The notes under the pieces are model-generated. The model saw only the letters and a list, made by a program, of their open reading frames with translations. It was not told the origin of the DNA and did not search any database. A program made the translations under genes and the position numbers. From the IMG/VR virus record IMGVR_UViG_3300005253_001115, positions 124,001-188,000 of that record: 64,000 nt of DNA; one strand, given 5' to 3'. The first letter of the stretch is position 1, and every line of letters starts with the position of its first letter. Below are positions 21,757-32,192 of this stretch, piece after piece.

Positions 21757-23840
21757 TAAGACTTTCTCAGTTCTGTTACGAGGTTTCTGATCGAATCCCC
21801 GGAGAGGCGGGCAACAAAGAACCTAGCATCGTTGATGGCGCACCCGTAGTTAGAGCCGTAGACTCCTAGGTCTCGAATTGTCGAAATCGCTGTCCGCCGC
21901 AGCACGTCGAAGCTATCTCTAATCTGCCGCAGGGCTTCTTCTTGTCCATTTTCCAGCGGGATGCTGAATGCTTCAGGGAACTCAGCCGACGGCAGTAGTG
22001 CGTCTATCACCGTTACAGGCAAGCTTAGGAGCCTTCCAACCGGATCTTCCTCACTGTCGCCGCGCAGTGCCGAAGCAAACGTCCCTACTTGTAGAGATAC
22101 GCTATTGAAGAGAACTTTTGCCTCGGGAGTAGACAACAGTACCGTTTGGATCTGTGACCGTAATTCCTCAATCCCTGCGGGAAGTTCCGTAACTAAGTTG
22201 CTTGTAGCGGGTTCACCATCAGCCAGTACGACATTGGTCATGCTGCCAACGGATACGCAACTTGCCAGGAAATCCCTAATGTTTCCGTGCCTGTATGAGC
22301 CCAGATACTCGTCAATCAGCAACCGAAGGGCAGAAAGTCCATCCAGCACCTCTTGGAGGTCCGGGTCGATCTGGAAGTCGAAGTCCTCGGGGAATCCAGT
22401 GATCTGGTCTTGGATTCGGAGAGACTTGACCAGATTACAGGCCCTAGTGAGCGTGTTGTTGGTGGACTCGACCGTTCTGGCTCCGGCTATCCTAGGAGCG
22501 GGATCAGGAGGAGTAAGAAACGTCGAGTAGGCTGTCTGAAGACTAACGATGTCGGCCAGCACGGCAAGCAAGGCTTCTGTGATGTCGCGTTGACTAGAAT
22601 TTTCTCGCCCGACGATTACCCGGTGGGCGTCCAAAGAGGCGACTACCCGCTTCGAGGCCGTTACTACATCCTGCCTAAATGTCGGGCTCAGGTTCAAGGC
22701 ACTGCTGGTGAATCTTAGTGTGTCCGGCTCCTGCTGTAGCAAGAACCCCAGAGCCCTGCGCTCAACTTCGTTACTTGTCTGGGGGAACACAGTGACTCGC
22801 AGTTCGTTTGCGTTCAGGTTTGCACCTGTGTAATTCTGATCGTCACGGTTCACCAGAGAGTGTTCCAATTCTGTTTCTGTGACGCCTGCCTCAAAGGCAC
22901 CTGACACCACCTCCGTGTCGGAAAGCACAGTAGTACCAAAAGTCATTTGGGCCAAGAAACGAAAGGCATCCTGCTGTACAGCATCCAGAATCCTTAGAAG
23001 CTCAGGCTGTGAGGGAAGTGAACTTGTTGCGAACTGGAAGCGCGCCAGCATGGCGTCTAGTAGGCCCAGGAATACACTGGAGCTGCTGCGTGCTAGGTCA
23101 TCTCCGAAGGATGCAGAACGTATCTGTAGATTGTTTAGGCCGAGCGTCACCTTCATCTTAGAGAAGTTTTCGGACGTGGGGTTTACGGTTCCGTACCACA
23201 CTACTCGGGTGGACATTTGATCCTTGGGCACATCTGAAGATTTGGACAAGGCGTCTAGCTGCTTGTTAATAGCCAGAAATACTGGGAACACAACGTATAC
23301 CAGTTCTGGAAGTTCCGGGAACTGGAAGAACTCGAATGTATCTATACCCAATTCAGCGGCTATCTGGTCTCGCGTCTTAGCAGTGCCATCAGGGTTTCGG
23401 GCATTGGTAGACACTACCTCGAACTTGTTGATAGTAACATCAAACGTGTTCGTCTCAGGAATACCGGGCGGGTGGGCGTCAATACGCTCCGATACCAGAG
23501 TCAGGTTTTTGTCGGCACTTAGGTAGAATTCTCTAAGGTCTTTCAGGTTGCTTTGTGTAGGAGCAGAAGGCACAAACACCGCCCCTAGAGCTGTTACTTC
23601 TGTGTAGGATAGGCGTACCTGATCGTACAAGACAGTGGGGCTGATAGGCGGCAGAGCCCGCTGGCTTACCAACTGATCGTACCCCACCCCCAGAACCTTT
23701 CTAGTGATGGTATCGTACTTGTCCCTCAGGGCTAAGATAGCGGTCGTGCTTAGGTCTAGGCTTCCCAAATTCTCGCGAATCTGGTCCGCGAGGGCTGTAC
23801 CCTCTTCAACAACTCCCCGTACTGCGCTTTGAACAGTCAT
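21756..23840 (-). CDS. Hypothetical large helical protein (baseplate module)
   Basis: 694 aa, L/A/S-rich, coupled on both sides. Confidence 0.55.
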   Translation of the reverse strand: MTVQSAVRGVVEEGTALADQIRENLGSLDLSTTAILALRDKYDTITRKVLGVGYDQLVSQRALPPISPTVLYDQVRLSYTEVTALGAVFVPSAPTQSNLKDLREFYLSADKNLTLVSERIDAHPPGIPETNTFDVTINKFEVVSTNARNPDGTAKTRDQIAAELGIDTFEFFQFPELPELVYVVFPVFLAINKQLDALSKSSDVPKDQMSTRVVWYGTVNPTSENFSKMKVTLGLNNLQIRSASFGDDLARSSSSVFLGLLDAMLARFQFATSSLPSQPELLRILDAVQQDAFRFLAQMTFGTTVLSDTEVVSGAFEAGVTETELEHSLVNRDDQNYTGANLNANELRVTVFPQTSNEVERRALGFLLQQEPDTLRFTSSALNLSPTFRQDVVTASKRVVASLDAHRVIVGRENSSQRDITEALLAVLADIVSLQTAYSTFLTPPDPAPRIAGARTVESTNNTLTRACNLVKSLRIQDQITGFPEDFDFQIDPDLQEVLDGLSALRLLIDEYLGSYRHGNIRDFLASCVSVGSMTNVVLADGEPATSNLVTELPAGIEELRSQIQTVLLSTPEAKVLFNSVSLQVGTFASALRGDSEEDPVGRLLSLPVTVIDALLPSAEFPEAFSIPLENGQEEALRQIRDSFDVLRRTAISTIRDLGVYGSNYGCAINDARFFVARLSGDSIRNLVTELRKS

Positions 23841-25267
23841 TACGATCTAATTGCCTTTGCACTGGACAGACCGCCTGCGGTACCCTTAGTACCGCTGCGG
23901 TCCTTCCTTCCCAGGTTCGGGGCCACGATGCCCGAATTGCTTAGCACGCCACCAGCCCTGATAACACCTGTCACGTCTAGGTTTCCTGCTACTGTCACTA
24001 GAGGTGTCTCTAACACAATAGACTTGGCCAGAACCGTAAACACGTCGCACTCGAAAGAACCAGTGGTTTTCGTGAAACCCATCTTGCTGGCTGATCCCGA
24101 CGAAACCGACAGAGAACCCGTCACCTTGATAAGCTTGTTTCCTTCCACCGTCTCTGTTGAGTTGGCCTTCATGAGGCGAATCTCGTCTCCCGTTACGGTG
24201 ACCCTGTGGATGTTGCCTACTTCCTTGATGTCATCATTACCGATTCGCTGGATCTTATCCACACCAATGCTAACATCCTCGTTGCGTCCGATGGTGCGCT
24301 CAAAGTTGAGACCAATCTGAGCCTTCAGTGTGCCTGCTGGCAGAATGAAAGTTCCACCGATGCTGGCCTCTACCGGGTGCTCAATCTTGAAGTTTCCATT
24401 CTCGTCTAGCTGCACCAGGACTGAGGTTTCGGCGGGCGTGAAATACTCCGCCCGTGCGCGAAGATTCAAACCCGTATCGTCCAGAGTGTAAGGCATACCT
24501 TCGTCGTCAATAGCGTTCCCTGTTCTCGTATCGAACAGAACAGCAGGGGACGCACTCTGTGCATTGGACATCCGAATAAGATATTCCTTTGCAAACCCGC
24601 TGGCATTCTCTCCCCGTTTGCCCTTGTCGTCTGGGAAGAACTTGTCTACGTAACTTCCTGCGTCCTGCCTTCGCACAACGCCAAAGCGTTCCTCGTCCTT
24701 GATGGTGTTCTCGTCGTTCTGGTATCCGCGTCTAATGTGCAACGGAGCCTTCATCCCAAACTCGGCCTCGTCTTGGTCCATCTTCATGCTTATGATGCCC
24801 GCCCGCATGTCAATGTGCGGTCTGCTACCCATGTAGAGGTTGGTCCCGCCGCGCGAAGTAATATCAATCTCACCCTCTTCTAGGGGCCGGAAAGCCTCTG
24901 CTGATACAAGCTCGCCGGAACCGCTGATGAGATTTTCAACGTTTCCCCGGAAGTCAATAAGGCGCTGTTGTGTATCTGTGTGCCAGTATCGCATGTGCTC
25001 CGGCTCTTGGGAGTCACTACGGGTGATTAAGAGAGTTCCCATGCCAGCTTCGGGCGCAGCGCGCATCCAAGCAGAGCGGCCCAGGTGGGGCTGGGGGTTA
25101 GCTATGATTCGGCGTCCACCGTGGCTGTCCACCATTGTGGTATCGGATTGGGCGTTGTATTCCTTGATGAACCCAAAATACGGCCTATCAGTCCCCTGCA
25201 ATTTAGCTACGGTCTTCTGCTTAGCCTTGCGCAATAGCTGTGCTCTGGTTTCTACGTTTCTAGCCAT
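23840..25267 (-). CDS. Baseplate central spike (gp5/gpV/VgrG C-terminus-like)
   Basis: N-terminal OB-fold-like segment (WMRAAPEAGMGTLL); 8-residue beta-helix repeats IGLNFERT-IGRNEDVS-IGVDKIQR-IGNDDIKE-VGNIHRVT-VTGDEIRL; C-terminal VTVAGNLDVTGVI. Confidence 0.75.
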   Translation of the reverse strand: MARNVETRAQLLRKAKQKTVAKLQGTDRPYFGFIKEYNAQSDTTMVDSHGGRRIIANPQPHLGRSAWMRAAPEAGMGTLLITRSDSQEPEHMRYWHTDTQQRLIDFRGNVENLISGSGELVSAEAFRPLEEGEIDITSRGGTNLYMGSRPHIDMRAGIISMKMDQDEAEFGMKAPLHIRRGYQNDENTIKDEERFGVVRRQDAGSYVDKFFPDDKGKRGENASGFAKEYLIRMSNAQSASPAVLFDTRTGNAIDDEGMPYTLDDTGLNLRARAEYFTPAETSVLVQLDENGNFKIEHPVEASIGGTFILPAGTLKAQIGLNFERTIGRNEDVSIGVDKIQRIGNDDIKEVGNIHRVTVTGDEIRLMKANSTETVEGNKLIKVTGSLSVSSGSASKMGFTKTTGSFECDVFTVLAKSIVLETPLVTVAGNLDVTGVIRAGGVLSNSGIVAPNLGRKDRSGTKGTAGGLSSAKAIRS

Positions 25268-25268
25268 C

Positions 25269-28200
25269 TTAACCCTGATCCTCGTCCTCGTCGCCGAAAT
25301 CGAATTCGTACTTAAACCGGCTCTGCTCGGCCTGCACTTCTATAGCGCCTGCCTCTGTGCTGGGTGTTGCGGCTACGTCCGACGTTGCAAAGACCAGCAC
25401 CCCGACAGTAGACTGGAAGCCTTGACCCGATGGCAGTACCCCTGCCGTCTCGGCCTCTTCGACAGCGGCCTTAGCTTCGGCAGATTTCGCTACTTCGACA
25501 GGATCTACCTCTCCCGGGAACAGCTCGCTGTACGCACTCTTTAGAGGTTGCGCAATTTTCTCCCATGCCGCACCTAGCTTCTTATTGACAGCTCCCTTAG
25601 TCTTTTTCCAGTTTTCCAGTGTTAACGGGTTCTTAATCCCGTCGGGACCAAGATCGAATTCGGCTGCGACCATATCGAAATCACCCTTCCACTTGTAAGT
25701 TAGTTTTCTCCAGTATCCGTCTGCTGCTATAGTCTGCTCGTTAATATCGGCGGAGTCTCCAATGCCCAGGCCCTCCCTTTGTTCAGAGGATAGACCAAAT
25801 AGACCGTAGGACCCGTCCAGCAAGCGGTTTAGCGGATTCCAGCCACTATTCTGTTGGGCCATAGCCAGGAACCTACCTACAGACTCGGCAGACGGAACAG
25901 GGCTTCCGCCGGGTTCAGCTATGTCTTGAACGCCCGTTGACACCTGAGCGCTTGTTTCTGTTTGTAAAGGTTCTTCCTTGGCAGGCAGAGAGGTAGTCCT
26001 ATCCTCAGACCCAGCTAGGACGGGGGTTCCTTTAGCCGAACCGGTGGCAGGTGTAATAGTGCTGTTCTCGAAGATTTCCCTGTAGGTGATCGGCATAGTA
26101 GTACCACTGAAGATAAAGGTGTAGTTGGCCGTGCCGTCGGGTCGGAATATCTGTCTTCGCACGTATCTAGTGGTGATGGCCGTGTTACCCTCCTTGAACA
26201 CCGTCAGGGAGTTGTTCACGACCGTAGTGAGCCCGATACGCTTCCTCTCCATGTGTTCCATGGGACGGTTGGGTAGAATCCACGGGCGATAATTGAAGGC
26301 CATGTTCATTTTGTTGGACTCGGCCAGCTTCTTCTGGAACTCGATCTGCGCAAGACGGCCCAGGGCGTCAACTTGGGATACGAACGGCAAAGTAAGTTCG
26401 TGCTCTAGCACCCCGTACCTCATCATCATCATAGGGGACACCACCACAGCCTTAGGTTGGATGAAGTCAGGAATATTGGACGCCTCTCCTTCCGGCCGGA
26501 TACGCCCATGAGCGATAACGCAAGTAACCATATCACCCGCCTCATCCTGAATGGTGTCGCTTGTGAGATGCTTGTCTACCTTGAAGACTGTGCTATACTC
26601 TCCGTAATCCTCAGGCATGAAGTCATACTGTGGAAACTCTACAATGAAATCCCCCATGGGAGAAACCCAGAACTGGTAGTCGATACGGGCAGAGAAGTCC
26701 TGCATGATGTCGAGTCGGGAACGGAAGTCAATCTGGTTGCTGTTGGCGTTCTCCACGTCGGAATCGAGAAGGTTCTTGGCTCCGGTGCCGGAAGCTGGCA
26801 AAAGAAAGTGTACATACTGCTTGTGCGGTGACCACTCTCCGTCGTGCGTTGTTGCCTTGCCAATGTAGGTCGCTTCTGCGGCCGTAAGATAGCGGCGATC
26901 TAAATTCCCTGTTGCTGCCGCAACCTTTTCAGCCGAGACGCTACCTTGAGTGGAATTAAGTAGTTGCTCTTCCTTCTCGGTGGTCTTCTTAATGGTCTTG
27001 ATTACACCCCCCACCTTTTCAGAAGCATCCCCGTCTAGTGAAACTCTGCGAAACTGGTTTGCCCCGTTGGTTCCGAACAAACAAAGAGCATGCCAGTGTT
27101 CTAGCGGGTCGGGTGCTATCTTTTTTTCCGCCTTGCTATCTCCGGGGCGGTATGAGATCTTCTCACCGAGCGTGAAGTCACCAATTCCTCGCCGGAACTT
27201 GGATTCACCAAATGCTTTGTTCAGTTCTTCCGATTCTGTGGACGTTCCTGTAATGAGGAACTCCATAACGTCTTCATAGCGCTTGGCTTGAAGAGGGTGT
27301 CCTTGGATTGTGGGACTCAACAGGTCAGTAAATAACGATGCAGAGCCCGCCGCATCCTTGCCCTGGAACAAGGCGCGAGGATTAGTTACACCGGTTACGG
27401 CAGTTTCCTGTACACGCATCTTAGCGGCTATAGCGCGAATGTCGTAACAAGAAATCTTAACCTGTGACTGTCCGTTGATGTAGTTAGTGTCGTAACTGAT
27501 CTCCGATAGATAGCCGGTGAAGGCAGGCATCCACTCGTTCGCTTCCCGTATCGGGTTCTTTCTAAAAACTCGGATAGGATCGTGCTTGTGGAACACTGTA
27601 GACATGAACCCTAGCTGCCACCGCCTGTCTGTAAGGCCGGTATTAGCCTGGAAGGTAGTCTTTTCGGCTCGATTCTTCTTAGGTGCTACGGCCTCGCCCT
27701 TTACAGGAGGTACAACTTTTCCGGTAGCGTTGGATACCGCATCTATCTGCTTGCCTGTTGCGTCGATATTTTCCACACCTTGTGTGATGGACACCTGGGT
27801 CAATCTCATTTTCTCGATATCAACGAGCGGGTTCCTGTTAAGGTCATTTTTGTACTCGATCAAATCCTTCTTGGCCTGCTCGCTGTACTTTCTCTCGCCT
27901 TGTCCGTCTGCGGTTCGGAACGTGCCCTTCAAGTCATTATTGAAACCCATGTTCTCTTGGGTGATGACAAAGTTATTCATGGCATTGTTTAGAGTGAGAT
28001 TGCACTCGTTCCAACCGTCCTTGTCAACTATGTTGATGTTTAGCTGACCCACTAAGTAACCGGAAACGTCCACGCCACTGATGAATACCATGACATCGTG
28101 AGAAAAGACTTGGTTCTTATGCTCCACAAACTTTACTTGGGGGCGTGTAATGTAAGGGAAGTTCGAAACACCGGCTTGCTCCAAAAGCCCTTCGGATTCC

Positions 28201-28790
28201 AGCTCCTTTACAGCCGCAAGTTCGTTTAGGCCCTGAGTTTCTAGATCCGCGTCTTTGGGAGCTTCCTTGATACCTGTTGAATTGGCAGTCTCGTCCCCCT
28301 CCTGAGCAGCACCTGGATCTACTTGGACTCGCTTGATTAGGTTTCTCGCGAGTTCGCCCTGGGGAGACAGCTTAGCCGCTTCTGTGCCAGAGCCGTTTGC
28401 GTTAACGCCATAGCGGATGCCGGTCTTTCCGCCGGTTGGGAAGAACGAAACGGTGCCTATCTGGTGACCGGCAGAGACCTTCTCTCCCACTTGTACATTG
28501 ACAGATCCCAAATTTGCATAGGAGGTATTTGGGAATTCTGCAAGATTTACGTTGGGGTCAGACGGGGTGCGGCCGGAGAGGTCCGTGCCATTCTCTGTAG
28601 CGGCCAGAATAATGGTGAAGAACTTTTGGGACTTGATGATGGACTTGACGCGGCCGGGGTGTGTAGAACGGACCGGATCGCCTCCCCGAGCAAAGATGGA
28701 GAGCCTTTTGTCCTTAGCACCCAGGGGACCGACTTCCGCTTTGTCCTTGTCTATCGGAGACTTCATCCTGTCTAGAGAGTCTGTTGTCAT
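25269..28790 (-). CDS. Baseplate hub protein (gp27/gpD-like) with degenerate M23-like and lytic-transglycosylase-like domains
   Basis: Core: VMVFISGVDVS, FTGYLSEISY..VKISCYD, YQFWVSPMGDFIVEFPQYD, MRYGV, PWILPNRP. N-terminal M23-like and C-terminal SLT-like segments. Upstream of the spike gene. Confidence 0.7.
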   Translation of the reverse strand: MTTDSLDRMKSPIDKDKAEVGPLGAKDKRLSIFARGGDPVRSTHPGRVKSIIKSQKFFTIILAATENGTDLSGRTPSDPNVNLAEFPNTSYANLGSVNVQVGEKVSAGHQIGTVSFFPTGGKTGIRYGVNANGSGTEAAKLSPQGELARNLIKRVQVDPGAAQEGDETANSTGIKEAPKDADLETQGLNELAAVKELESEGLLEQAGVSNFPYITRPQVKFVEHKNQVFSHDVMVFISGVDVSGYLVGQLNINIVDKDGWNECNLTLNNAMNNFVITQENMGFNNDLKGTFRTADGQGERKYSEQAKKDLIEYKNDLNRNPLVDIEKMRLTQVSITQGVENIDATGKQIDAVSNATGKVVPPVKGEAVAPKKNRAEKTTFQANTGLTDRRWQLGFMSTVFHKHDPIRVFRKNPIREANEWMPAFTGYLSEISYDTNYINGQSQVKISCYDIRAIAAKMRVQETAVTGVTNPRALFQGKDAAGSASLFTDLLSPTIQGHPLQAKRYEDVMEFLITGTSTESEELNKAFGESKFRRGIGDFTLGEKISYRPGDSKAEKKIAPDPLEHWHALCLFGTNGANQFRRVSLDGDASEKVGGVIKTIKKTTEKEEQLLNSTQGSVSAEKVAAATGNLDRRYLTAAEATYIGKATTHDGEWSPHKQYVHFLLPASGTGAKNLLDSDVENANSNQIDFRSRLDIMQDFSARIDYQFWVSPMGDFIVEFPQYDFMPEDYGEYSTVFKVDKHLTSDTIQDEAGDMVTCVIAHGRIRPEGEASNIPDFIQPKAVVVSPMMMMRYGVLEHELTLPFVSQVDALGRLAQIEFQKKLAESNKMNMAFNYRPWILPNRPMEHMERKRIGLTTVVNNSLTVFKEGNTAITTRYVRRQIFRPDGTANYTFIFSGTTMPITYREIFENSTITPATGSAKGTPVLAGSEDRTTSLPAKEEPLQTETSAQVSTGVQDIAEPGGSPVPSAESVGRFLAMAQQNSGWNPLNRLLDGSYGLFGLSSEQREGLGIGDSADINEQTIAADGYWRKLTYKWKGDFDMVAAEFDLGPDGIKNPLTLENWKKTKGAVNKKLGAAWEKIAQPLKSAYSELFPGEVDPVEVAKSAEAKAAVEEAETAGVLPSGQGFQSTVGVLVFATSDVAATPSTEAGAIEVQAEQSRFKYEFDFGDEDEDQG

Positions 28791-31079: not shown

Positions 31080-32192
31080 CTAGTCCTGTAGAACTGGAGA
31101 CACGGAGGATGCGGGGACCTTGAGGCTCTCCATCACGATCGTGTCTTCCATGACCAGTAAGCGCGTCGGGCCGTACTTCAGCCCCTCGTCTCGGGTCAGC
31201 TTCAAAATGTCTTGGAAGGTATCCGAGCTTACTCGGAATTCCACATCTTCGTCACCATCCATAGTGACGTTAATGTCGAACTCAGACTCCATCTCTCCGG
31301 CAGCGCTCTCCGCAGAGAGGACGGCCAAGCCCTCCTTCTTGATGGTGACGAAAAATCGTGCTCCGTCCTTGTCCGCAGACCGGATGATGCCTTTGGTGGC
31401 GTCGATTGCGTCAGTTACTGCATTGCCGTCGAACTCTACCACGGCGAGATGATCTCCCTCGGATTTAAGCTGGGTAATCACCTCCTTCACATCCTGAGAG
31501 TCTTCTTGCATCACGGCGTGATAGAGATCAAATGTGTCCGTCCGAAGACGAAAGAAACAATCGTCAGCACCCATCTTGACGACACCATCGGGCTGAACCT
31601 TGGATATGATGTTCCGCCAGACCTCTAGCTCGACTGTGAGTTGGAAAGCTTCCTTGGCACGAATCTCCTCATTGGAGACCCCGTAGTGTGTACCCATGTA
31701 GGTGTCGTAAGCGCTGATGTTCAGCTCTCTGTTCTCGACTTGGAGAATGACGGTAGGGCTGCTGGCGTCTATTAGCGGCTTGAATGCCGTGGCCCCGGTT
31801 GCGAATACCAGCAGCTTAGCCGGAACCACAGCCTGGACTTTCACAGTATCCTCTGGGCGCTCGATGTCGATGTCCTCTTCAGGGAGAACCCGAATGGCAC
31901 CACGGGTTCTACCCATAGTTACATTAACATTGTCCCCGTCTTCGAATACCATTGTAAGCGTCTTCGTCTTGGGCTTCACAGACCCTAGGAACTCGATCTT
32001 CGTGCAACACGCACCCTCGCCAGAGCTGGACTCAAGCTTCAAGGGCACCTGAACGTAAGCCTCGGGGTTGGACGCCTCGATACGCGCCTTCCCGTCCGCC
32101 AGCTTCAGGATGCAGTCCACCTCTGTACCCAGAAGGGATGTAATGGTAGAAACTGCCATGTTGTAGGACTCAGATTCGACTACCAGTTCCAT
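31080..32192 (-). CDS. DNA polymerase sliding clamp (bacterial beta/DnaN-like)
   Basis: 370 aa, acidic, three repeated alpha/beta domains (LADGKARIEASNPE; VENRELNISAYD; KEGLAVLSAESAAGEMESEF...DVEFRVSSDTFQDIL); length and pattern match DnaN. Confidence 0.65.
   Translation of the reverse strand: MELVVESESYNMAVSTITSLLGTEVDCILKLADGKARIEASNPEAYVQVPLKLESSSGEGACCTKIEFLGSVKPKTKTLTMVFEDGDNVNVTMGRTRGAIRVLPEEDIDIERPEDTVKVQAVVPAKLLVFATGATAFKPLIDASSPTVILQVENRELNISAYDTYMGTHYGVSNEEIRAKEAFQLTVELEVWRNIISKVQPDGVVKMGADDCFFRLRTDTFDLYHAVMQEDSQDVKEVITQLKSEGDHLAVVEFDGNAVTDAIDATKGIIRSADKDGARFFVTIKKEGLAVLSAESAAGEMESEFDINVTMDGDEDVEFRVSSDTFQDILKLTRDEGLKYGPTRLLVMEDTIVMESLKVPASSVSPVLQD

What the first reader, a model, noticed from the sequence alone, without database searches (positions are those of the whole stretch)
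25269..28790. Baseplate hub carries two apparently inactive peptidoglycan-hydrolase domains
Seen: the N-terminal segment (about 28390-28710) follows the M23 peptidase pattern (IFA..GDPVRS...GRV...TSYANLGSVNVQVGEKVSAGHQIGTV), but HxxxD is absent, YAHL is YANL, and HLH is replaced by GIRY. The C-terminal segment (about 25635-25880) follows the SLT pattern, but QES is QQNS, GLMQ is GLFG and AAYNAG is AAEFDLG. Established: the Zn-binding His/Asp residues and the catalytic Glu are needed for activity. Inference: both cell-wall-degrading domains have lost catalysis but are retained, either as glycan-binding or structural modules or because the host envelope no longer requires them. This may be a clue to an unusual host.
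Basis: partly seen in the sequence, partly recalled or inferred. Interest (0 to 1): 0.6.

Follow-up and report, generated by a model that had tools for sequence, protein, structure and literature searches.

The report
Phage baseplate hub with two dead lysin domains
The central tail-tip (baseplate hub) protein of an uncultured giant phage from marine sediment carries two cell-wall-cutting domains that lack every catalytic residue yet are conserved, so they probably act as binding or structural parts; this is an unusual variant of a known design and does not point to a strange host.

Summary
The central core (aa ~206-905) has the gp27 / Mu gp44 / P2 gpD baseplate-hub fold. The N-terminal domain (aa 8-154) has the M23/LytM fold. 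The C-terminal domain (aa 940-1082) has the family-1 lytic-transglycosylase (SLT) fold.

In this protein and all 24 aligned full-length homologues (44-91% identity), the M23-like domain lacks HxxxD, the YxHL histidine and HxH. The SLT-like domain has N/S/A/L/T/Q/M where the catalytic Glu should be. Both domains evolve under purifying selection (dN/dS 0.12-0.33), whereas the linker before the SLT-like domain is relaxed (0.54-1.3).

The hub core belongs to a large, unnamed metagenomic family. Distant members often carry canonical enzymes at the C-terminus: M23 with all motifs, VanY/M15, amidase, NlpC/P60, CHAP or SLT. The nearest relatives carry none.

The same phage genome (266.6 kb, marine sediment) encodes a canonical signal-anchored SLT and a canonical GH108 muramidase. 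The host therefore has ordinary peptidoglycan, and the "unusual host" reading is not supported.

Most likely the two domains are pseudoenzymes kept as tethered, non-catalytic binding or structural modules. Bacterial degenerate LytM factors and the inactive CHAP "clip" domain in the phage 812 baseplate are precedents. This is a new variant of a known kind and of moderate interest.

The parts
25269..28790 (-). Whole gene: 1173-aa baseplate hub protein (P0001) with two terminal pseudoenzyme domains
   Evidence: Intact ORF. There are 25 further hits of 972-1192 aa at 43-90% identity, of which 24 full-length ones were aligned. The locus is syntenic in a relative.
28329..28769 (-). aa 8-154: degenerate LytM (M23-fold) domain. 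The Zn ligands and catalytic His are replaced by D27, S31, N93 (codon 28512-28514), I125 and Y127.
   Evidence: dN/dS is 0.14-0.33.
28176..28328 (-). aa 155-205: poorly conserved acidic linker
   Evidence: pLDDT below 50. Mean pairwise identity is 0.29 against 0.62 in the core.
26076..28175 (-). aa 206-905: gp27 / Mu gp44 / P2 gpD-type hub core, about twice the usual size because of insertions
   Evidence: AF2 with 147 sequences gives pLDDT 83.9, pTM 0.87. Foldseek and VIA hits: 9gtr_q Z 19.2, A-1(L) hub 8kea_A Z 18.6, Mu gp44 Z 17.7, phage 812 hub Z 16.8, T4 gp27. No Pfam, PHROG or PDB sequence hit.
25974..26075 (-). aa 906-939: start of the variable linker before the C-domain
   Evidence: The linker2 block as measured (aa 906-965) has mean identity 0.24 and dN/dS 0.54-1.3. 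pLDDT is low.
25545..25973 (-). aa 940-1082: degenerate family-1 lytic-transglycosylase (SLT/GH23-fold) domain. The catalytic Glu position is N981 (codon 25848-25850). E1044-F1045 are invariant.
   Evidence: dN/dS for aa 966-1082 is 0.12-0.21.
25269..25544 (-). aa 1083-1173 plus stop: C-terminal tail with a conserved G-F-Q-S-T-V-G-V-L-V-F-like motif (G1124 and G1130 invariant); function unknown
   Evidence: pLDDT is low.
23840..25267 (-). Downstream gene: 475-aa gp5/VgrG-like central spike. Its ATG lies one base after the hub stop (TAAGATG).
   Evidence: Pfam Gp5_trimer_C E 6.4e-6. Weak PDB hits to the T4 gp5 beta-helix and to VgrG1. Junction read. Same gene order in relatives.

Best explanation
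What it is. The gene encodes the hub of a contractile-tail baseplate of an uncultured ~267-kb marine-sediment myophage. By analogy with gp27-type hubs it is presumably a trimer. The gp27/gp44-type core should form the ring that continues the tail tube and holds the gp5-like spike encoded by the next gene.

The two terminal domains. Flexible linkers tether an N-terminal M23/LytM-fold domain and a C-terminal SLT-fold domain to the core. Both are pseudoenzymes. They keep the fold but have none of the residues that bind Zn or perform catalysis, and this holds for the whole clade. They nevertheless evolve under purifying selection.

Inferred role. They work as non-catalytic binding modules.
- Most probably they dock onto partner proteins of the baseplate core or tail tip (spike, tape measure or inner baseplate). 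Every characterised degenerate LytM domain works this way, and so does the inactive CHAP 'clip' domain of the phage 812 weld protein.
- Alternatively they hold on to peptidoglycan without cutting it.

How the wall is crossed. Passage through the murein would then rely on the mechanical drive of contraction and the spike. Any help from the phage's separate canonical SLT is untested.

Shown versus inferred.
- Shown: the folds, the missing catalytic residues, conservation and selection, the hub identity, the modular cargo in relatives, and canonical lysins elsewhere in the genome.
- Inferred: lack of activity, the binding role and its partner, and the trimeric state.
For: Hub identity: with the spike next door.

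M23 fold without the five catalytic or ligand residues.

SLT fold without the catalytic Glu. The list of structural matches itself includes Glu-to-Gln forms, one titled an inactive mutant (Slt E503Q, 6fc4) and MltE-E64Q (4hjy).

Other cleft residues are also lost. The Gln of GLMQ is variable, the Asn of AYNxG is variable, and the Tyr is Phe.

Purifying selection. dN/dS is 0.14-0.33 for the N-domain and 0.12-0.21 for the C-domain, against 0.07-0.14 for the core and 0.54-1.3 for linker 2.

Clade structure. The clade is monophyletic (support 1.0) and its neighbours are 'naked' hubs of 567-654 aa.

Distant relatives carry canonical cargo. Among 99 C-terminal extensions, Pfam finds M23 in 28, VanY in 15, and also Amidase_2, NlpC/P60, CHAP, SLT and others. 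The ten M23 domains aligned in A8 keep HxGxD, YxH and HLH.

Precedents.
- Degenerate LytM domains act by protein-protein interaction (PMC9662197).
- The phage 812 weld 'clip' domain is a CHAP fold without Cys-His-Glu that binds the spike, while the 812 hub carries an active CHAP domain (PMC13433997).
- The A-1(L) hub carries three enzyme-like domains, two of them shown active (PMC10966104).
Against: - No activity assay exists.
- E1044 is invariant and D1012 is near-invariant in the SLT-like domain. T43-H44 and Y127 are invariant in the M23-like domain. These could serve an unrecognised chemistry.
- I could not inspect model coordinates to see whether these residues line the clefts.
- The partner of either domain is unknown.
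- Nothing here separates protein docking from peptidoglycan binding.
- The genome record is estimated 89% complete, so the inventory of other lysins is a lower bound.
Confidence: 0.7

Rival explanations
1. Peptidoglycan anchor. The two dead domains still bind the glycan strand (SLT-like cleft) and the peptide stem (LytM groove) without cutting. After penetration they would fix the tube tip in the murein layer, or sense contact with it and so trigger release of the spike and tape measure.
For: Glu-to-Gln lytic transglycosylases still bind glycan, for example MltE-E64Q with chitopentaose (4hjy), which appears among the structural matches. S982, G983, Q979, F998, F1045, G1048 and N1054 stay conserved in the cleft region. 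Long flexible tethers suit reaching outward. The 812 authors suggest that their dead CHAP domain may have retained peptidoglycan binding.
Against: Canonical sugar-contacting residues are lost or variable: the Gln of GLMQ, and the Tyr and Asn of AYNxG. All characterised degenerate LytM domains bind proteins, not peptidoglycan stems.
Confidence: 0.3
2. Host-autolysin hijack. The hub's degenerate LytM domain mimics EnvC, NlpD or DipM. Once in the periplasm it would switch on host amidases or lytic transglycosylases locally, so that the host's own enzymes open the wall for the tail tube.
For: The best sequence match in PDB is the DipM LytM domain at 6.2e-5. EnvC, DipM and SpoIIQ are among the top structural matches at Z 13.5-13.9. 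Degenerate LytM factors activate amidases through their inactive groove. The phage itself encodes no Amidase_2 or Amidase_3.
Against: Active M23 enzymes score equally well structurally, for example 2gu1 at Z 14.6 and StM23 at Z 14.5. The host is unknown, no partner was tested, and there is no precedent in phages.
Confidence: 0.08
3. Cryptic enzymes. One or both domains are still muralytic and use relocated residues, for example invariant E1044 or near-invariant D1012 as the acid in the SLT-like fold.
For: E1044 is invariant and lies beside the position of the AYNxG aromatic residue. D1012 is near-invariant. Purifying selection is comparable to that of the core.
Against: All five M23 ligand and catalytic positions are non-functional residues, and four of them vary freely. 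The Glu position of the SLT fold varies among N/S/A/L/T/Q/M, and other cleft residues are lost too. No family-1 transglycosylase is known to me to work without that Glu (own knowledge).
Confidence: 0.07
4. Relic of an unusual host. The domains decayed because the host wall no longer needs cutting, and they are on the way to being lost.
For: Nearest-neighbour hubs lack any lysin domain.
Against: dN/dS is well below 1 in both domains, while linker 2 between them is relaxed. The domains are retained in all 25 aligned homologues down to 44% identity. The genome keeps a canonical SLT and a canonical GH108 muramidase, so murein is present and must be cut at least at lysis.
Confidence: 0.03

Closest known systems
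Staphylococcus phage 812 baseplate core: hub protein with CHAP 'cleaver' domain, and weld protein with inactive CHAP 'clip' domain (PDB 9euf; PMC13433997)
   Same: The hub has a gp27-type fold with extra domains (Z 16.8, 370 residues aligned). A peptidoglycan-hydrolase fold lacking its catalytic residues is used as a structural connector in the baseplate core.
   Different: In 812 the hub-borne domain is active and the dead copy sits on a separate protein. The fold there is CHAP, not M23 or SLT, and the host is Gram-positive. Here both dead domains are on the hub itself, and no active domain was detected on it.
Anabaena myophage A-1(L) hub gp15 (PDB 8kea; PMC10966104)
   Same: An enlarged hub with several cell-wall-enzyme-like domains at both ends of the barrel core (Z 18.6).
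   Different: [quoted passage not shown] Here none of the catalytic residues are present.
Degenerate LytM factors EnvC, NlpD, DipM, SpoIIQ and Csd2
   Same: M23 fold without a full set of Zn ligands and catalytic His, conserved as an interaction module.
   Different: Those are bacterial periplasmic or forespore proteins with coiled-coil, LysM or transmembrane parts. This one is fused to a phage hub. No amidase-activating function has been shown.
phi29 gp13, cyanopodophage A4 gp28 and T7 gp16 (virion proteins with transglycosylase and/or M23 domains)
   Same: A lytic-transglycosylase-fold domain and an M23-fold domain combined on one virion protein. 9k2v_E matches both domains, 3csq/3csr match, and the T7 gp16 transglycosylase domain is the best sequence match of the C-domain.
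   Different: Those keep the catalytic residues and are described as wall-degrading. They are tail-knob or ejection proteins, not gp27-type hubs.
T4 gp27-gp5, Mu gp44 and P2 gpD hubs
   Same: Core fold and position next to the spike gene.
   Different: Those hubs are 330-390 aa without terminal enzyme-like domains. In T4 the (active) lysozyme sits on the spike gp5. No Pfam Phage_GPD signal was found here.

Membership tests
Peptidase M23 (MEROPS M23 / Pfam PF01551), as an enzyme | M23/LytM beta-fold | tested here: met
   VIA Z 14.6 (2gu1, rmsd 2.1 A over 117 residues) and 14.5 (9gy1). Foldseek TM 0.63-0.70 to isolated M23 domains.
Peptidase M23 (MEROPS M23 / Pfam PF01551), as an enzyme | Pfam model above the gathering score | tested here: inconclusive
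   23.6 bits against a cut-off of 28.7 for this protein. 28.8 bits when neighbouring stretches in the frame are added. 22 of 25 homologues match at E <= 0.01.
Peptidase M23 (MEROPS M23 / Pfam PF01551), as an enzyme | HxxxD zinc ligands | tested here: not met
   Aligned positions are D27 and S31, and both vary across the 25 homologues.
Peptidase M23 (MEROPS M23 / Pfam PF01551), as an enzyme | Catalytic His of YxHL and the HxH motif | tested here: not met
   N93 (N/G/P/A/S/I in the family), I125 (I/L/F/M) and Y127 (invariant Tyr).
Degenerate LytM factor (EnvC/NlpD/DipM type) | M23 fold with incomplete catalytic set, conserved | tested here: met
Degenerate LytM factor (EnvC/NlpD/DipM type) | Binds and activates a cell-wall amidase or transglycosylase | not testable with these tools
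   Host and partner are unknown. No complex prediction was run because no specific pair could be justified.
Family-1 lytic transglycosylase (GH23, Pfam SLT PF01464), as an enzyme | Goose-lysozyme-like SLT fold | tested here: met
   MltF Z 14.4 (147 aligned, rmsd 2.8 A), Slt 13.1, MltD 12.4, MltC 12.0, MltE 11.8.
Family-1 lytic transglycosylase (GH23, Pfam SLT PF01464), as an enzyme | Pfam SLT model hit | tested here: inconclusive
   No hit for this protein at E <= 1. 5 of 25 homologues hit, best 4.3e-6. The family profile finds T7 gp16 at 6.4e-5.
Family-1 lytic transglycosylase (GH23, Pfam SLT PF01464), as an enzyme | Catalytic Glu of the E-S motif | tested here: not met
   Position 981 is Asn here and N4 S4 A1 L11 T1 Q1 M3 in the family. 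It is never Glu or Asp.
Family-1 lytic transglycosylase (GH23, Pfam SLT PF01464), as an enzyme | GLMQ and AYNxG substrate-binding motifs | tested here: not met
   GLFG, with the Gln position variable. E-F-x-L-G, with Tyr replaced by invariant Phe and the Asn position variable.
gp27 / Mu gp44 / P2 gpD baseplate hub | Hub fold with the tube-like beta-barrel domains | tested here: met
   Z 15-19 over ~300 residues, covering nearly whole hub chains (3d37, 3cdd, 1wru, 6u5h). Foldseek also finds T4 gp27.
gp27 / Mu gp44 / P2 gpD baseplate hub | Encoded beside the central spike and within a baseplate module | tested here: met
   The gp5-like spike gene starts one base after the hub stop. A Baseplate_J gene lies downstream. 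Same gene order in relatives.
gp27 / Mu gp44 / P2 gpD baseplate hub | Trimer around the spike in the virion | not tested
   No multimer prediction was run, and no virion is available.
Virion-associated peptidoglycan hydrolase / tail-associated lysin | Muralytic activity of a virion protein | not testable with these tools
   The architecture fits (hub plus hydrolase folds), but catalytic residues are absent. An activity assay is needed.

The most novel reading that the evidence does not exclude
A phage hub carries an EnvC/NlpD/DipM-like degenerate LytM domain, possibly working together with the dead SLT-like domain. Once delivered into the periplasm it would activate the host's own amidases or lytic transglycosylases at the point of tail insertion. 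The phage would then breach the wall by hijacking host autolysins rather than by bringing an enzyme of its own.
Probability: 0.08. Interest if true: 0.8.

Novelty: new variant of a known kind. Interest (0 to 1): 0.4.

Why it matters
Virion-associated lysins are usually annotated from domain hits alone and are mined as enzybiotics. This clade shows that a hub can carry two lysin folds with no catalytic residues, so such annotations would be wrong for it. It also provides a second, independent case, after the phage 812 weld protein, of peptidoglycan-hydrolase folds being reused as non-catalytic parts of a baseplate. Finally, it exposes a large hub family (243 representative clusters at E <= 1e-30) that has no Pfam or PHROG model and carries interchangeable wall-enzyme cargo. 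If the domains prove to bind murein or to recruit host autolysins, that would bear on how contractile tails cross the wall without an enzyme of their own.

Tried and rejected
Searches that found nothing useful.
- tblastn and megablast of the protein, its core and a distant core-only relative against 50,697 GenBank phage records found nothing.
- A genome-contig scan for relatives of the hub found nothing.
- PHROGs has no family for the core.
- The core profile found nothing in PDB by sequence.
- Searching each terminal domain alone, as the operators advised, found only fragments of the same family plus two weak (28-30% identity) M23 proteins. No close active ancestor was identified.

Modelling.
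- The full-length AF2 run with 25 sequences left the core below pLDDT 50. The core was refolded with 147 sequences.

Host inference.
- The GH108 lysin has only 34-40% relatives, in Deferribacteres, Cohaesibacter and Holosporales MAGs. This is too distant to name a host.
- The atlas feature search gave only leads (GpP-like, DUF5047/5048), superseded by the fold search.

Steps not run.
- Complex prediction was not run because I could not justify one specific binding pair.

Hypotheses rejected.
- Tape-measure protein: the core is a hub fold, not a helical ruler.
- Assembly or frameshift artefact: the ORF is intact in several samples and in 24 full-length homologues.
- Wall-less or unusual host: see the two canonical lysins.


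Full report
LOCUS. The window is bases 124001-188000 of a 266,640-bp IMG/VR virus record, estimated 89% complete. The finding covers one intact ORF, 25269-28790 on the minus strand, encoding 1173 aa (P0001). Upstream on the coding strand, beyond four small unannotated ORFs, lie replication genes: a sliding-clamp-like protein, an RNase T-like exonuclease, a UvrD helicase carrying an intein, and a 5'-3' exonuclease. Downstream lies a baseplate module. First comes a 475-aa protein with the T4 gp5 C-terminal beta-helix domain (Pfam Gp5_trimer_C 6.4e-6; weak PDB matches to gp5 and VgrG1). Its ATG follows the hub stop after one base (TAAGATG). Next come a 694-aa protein, two small ORFs, an HNH endonuclease, and a Baseplate_J/gp6-like wedge protein. 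The same gene order occurs in a 194-kb MAG contig and in three closer relatives. The gene is near-identical in marine-sediment metagenome runs from at least two studies.

THREE-PART ARCHITECTURE. A word-index search found 25 further proteins of 972-1192 aa at 43-90% identity, all metagenomic and unnamed. I aligned 24 full-length ones with P0001 (alignment A2) and left out P0025, whose C-terminus is out of frame. Per-region mean pairwise identities are as follows:
- N-domain 0.39
- linker 1 0.29
- core 0.62
- linker 2 0.24
- C-domain 0.48
- tail 0.34

A full-length AlphaFold2 model built from 25 sequences was confident only for aa ~10-155 (pLDDT 70-86) and aa ~940-1080 (76-89).

N-DOMAIN.
- Pfam Peptidase_M23 is below threshold for this protein (23.6 against 28.7 bits) but matches 22 of 25 homologues, best 4e-9.
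- The family profile finds the DipM LytM domain in PDB at 6.2e-5.
- Foldseek returns 48 hits at E <= 1e-3; those listed are almost all M23/LytM structures.
- VIA-align gives Z 14.6 (2gu1, rmsd 2.1 A over 117 residues), 14.5 (StM23), and 13.5-13.9 for EnvC, DipM and SpoIIQ.
- I aligned the family profile to ten canonical M23 domains taken from distant hub relatives, all of which keep H..D, YxH and HxH. hhalign gave 93.5% probability, E 2e-7.
- The equivalences are: Zn-His to D27, Zn-Asp to S31, YxHL His to N93, and HxH to I125 and Y127.
- Across the 25 sequences the first four positions vary freely and Y127 is an invariant Tyr.
- None of the 25 sequences could be a zinc peptidase of the M23 type.
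- The family has its own invariant residues: T43-H44, G46, Y91, L94-G95, G112, Y127 and P143.

C-DOMAIN.
- Pfam SLT matches 5 of 25 homologues, best 4.3e-6.
- The family profile finds the N-terminal transglycosylase domain of T7 gp16 at 6.4e-5, and MltF at 0.013. The catalytic Glu of their E-S motif aligns to position 981.
- Structurally the domain matches MltF (Z 14.4, 147 aligned, rmsd 2.8 A), Slt, MltD, MltC, MltE and Slt70 (Z 11.1-13.1).
- Position 981 is N4 S4 A1 L11 T1 Q1 M3 and is never acidic.
- The Gln of GLMQ is variable, the Tyr of AYNxG is an invariant Phe, and its Asn is variable.
- S982, G983, Q979, F998, E1044, G1048 and N1054 are conserved.
- Glu-to-Gln forms of this fold appear in the match list itself: Slt E503Q, titled an inactive mutant, and MltE-E64Q.
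- Loss of transglycosylase activity is therefore a strong inference, though still an inference.

CORE.
- A profile search of 1.84 billion representatives with the whole-protein alignment gave 2360 hits at E <= 1e-3 and 243 at E <= 1e-30. Nearly all match only profile positions ~210-900.
- With 147 of these sequences the core folded at pLDDT 83.9, pTM 0.87.
- Foldseek and VIA-align both identify the gp27 / Mu gp44 / P2 gpD hub fold:
  - Streptomyces CIS baseplate protein, Z 19.2
  - A-1(L) hub, Z 18.6
  - Algoriphagus eCIS, Z 18.5
  - NMB1110, Z 18.3
  - MuSo2, Z 18.1
  - Mu gp44, Z 17.7
  - phage 812 hub, Z 16.8 (370 residues aligned)
  - pyocin R2 hub, Z 14.9
  - T4 gp27
- The family has no Pfam, PHROG or PDB sequence match and no tblastn match in GenBank phages.

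WHAT RELATIVES CARRY.
- HMMs of the two terminal domains find them only in the close clade and its fragments.
- Of 99 C-terminal extensions of distant core-family members, Pfam finds Peptidase_M23 in 28 (best 6e-52), VanY in 15 and M15_4 in 12. It finds Amidase_2 in 4, NlpC/P60 in 4, CHAP in 3 and M15_3 in 3.
- SLT occurs in 2, and Phage_lysozyme, GH46, Muramidase and 3D in 1 each.
- A motif scan and alignment show canonical HxGxD, YxH and HLH in many of those M23 domains.
- In a FastTree of the trimmed core, the dead-domain clade is monophyletic (support 1.0). Its neighbours are 567-654-aa hubs with no cargo.
- The scaffold is therefore a modular carrier of wall enzymes. This clade carries two non-catalytic versions, and I could not tell whether they were acquired already dead.

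SELECTION.
- I computed Nei-Gojobori dN/dS between the window gene and its 90%, 85% and 72% relatives.
- Values are 0.14-0.33 for the N-domain, 0.07-0.14 for the core, 0.12-0.21 for the C-domain, and 0.54-1.3 for linker 2.
- Both domains are maintained by selection, so they are not decaying relics.

HOST QUESTION.
- Family searches of the whole record found a second SLT at 253042-253374. It scores 94 bits, has E-S, GLTQ and AYNWG motifs, and has an N-terminal hydrophobic anchor.
- They also found a GH108 muramidase at 31712-31942, 95 bits, with an EGGY...DPGG motif.
- Nothing was found for Phage_lysozyme, Amidase_2, Amidase_3, VanY, NlpC/P60, M15_4 or Lysozyme_like. The GH19 control was silent.
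- The phage therefore deals with normal murein, and a signal-anchored SLT plus GH108 is the usual equipment of phages of diderm bacteria (own knowledge).
The host itself stays unknown: the samples are marine sediment, and the lysin's bacterial relatives are too distant to name it.

MECHANISM.
- Known degenerate LytM domains (EnvC, NlpD, DipM, Csd2, SpoIIQ) act through protein-protein contacts made by the inactive groove (PMC9662197).
- In the phage 812 baseplate the hub bears an active CHAP domain. The weld protein bears a CHAP fold without Cys-His-Glu that clips it to the central spike (PMC13433997).
- The A-1(L) hub bears three enzyme-like domains, two of which were shown to be active (PMC10966104).
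- phi29 gp13 and cyanophage A4 gp28 combine transglycosylase and M23 folds, and gp28 is reported with conserved catalytic residues.
- Against this background, the best reading is that the two tethered domains are pseudoenzymes. They would serve as docking or holding modules of the hub, most likely against other tail-tip proteins, or alternatively against murein.
- Wall passage would then depend on contraction and the spike.
- Less likely readings are cryptic activity through E1044 or D1012, and an EnvC-like activation of host autolysins.
- The domain order (dead M23 at the N-terminus, dead SLT at the C-terminus) and the complete loss in both domains are, as far as the searched papers and libraries show, not described for a hub.

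VERDICT. This is a new variant of a known kind and of moderate interest.

Noticed in passing
window:32770-35715 (-): The UvrD-type helicase (981 aa) carries an intein near its N-terminus, with Hom_end_hint, Hom_end and LAGLIDADG_3 domains at aa ~31-300. The orthologue in relative L002 is 637 aa and lists no intein or homing-endonuclease Pfam families. The PHROG 'terminase' hits over aa 46-381 of this protein probably reflect shared intein sequence.
   Followed up: partly
window:19987-20565 (-): An HNH endonuclease gene sits inside the baseplate module, between a 171-aa ORF and the Baseplate_J gene. It is at the same place in the 48%-identical relative L002 (18211-18795), so it is a long-resident element.
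   Followed up: partly
window:28329-28769 (-) compared with L005 and L006: Among the three closest relatives, the synonymous divergence of the N-domain is only ~0.05, against 0.34-0.66 in the hub core. This suggests recent recombination or exchange of the 5' end of the gene.
   Followed up: no
window:26076-28175 (-); proteins P0032-P0179: The hub core belongs to a large family with no Pfam or PHROG model: 243 representative clusters at E <= 1e-30, sizes 567-1984 aa. It is about twice the size of gp27 or gp44. Its C-terminal cargo is interchangeable: M23, VanY/M15, amidase, NlpC/P60, CHAP, SLT, lysozyme, GH46 or 3D.
   Followed up: partly
G000:C1:253042-253374 (-) (L003:1417-2190), outside the window: A canonical SLT protein with an N-terminal hydrophobic segment, either a signal-arrest-release type endolysin or a secreted lysin. 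It is far from the structural genes, and whether it is packaged in the virion is unknown.
   Followed up: partly
G000:C1:31712-31942 (-) (L008:1255-2025), outside the window: A canonical GH108 muramidase, a likely endolysin. The closest genomic relatives are only 34-40% identical, in Deferribacteres, Cohaesibacter and Holosporales MAGs.
   Followed up: partly
window:25269-25544 (-): The C-terminal 90 aa after the SLT-like domain hold a conserved hydrophobic motif (G-F-Q-S-T-V-G-V-L-V-F-like, with G1124 and G1130 invariant). It has no assigned fold and may be a strand that inserts into a partner.
   Followed up: no
window:21756-23840 (-): A 694-aa protein directly after the spike gene has no Pfam or PHROG match. 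A 693-aa gene occupies the same position in relative L002. Its role in the baseplate is unknown.
   Followed up: no
protein P0025 (a homologue, not in the window): One homologue (972 aa) has an out-of-frame, unalignable C-terminus from about the end of the core. This is probably a frameshift or assembly error in a 4.2-kb contig. It was left out of alignment A2.
   Followed up: no
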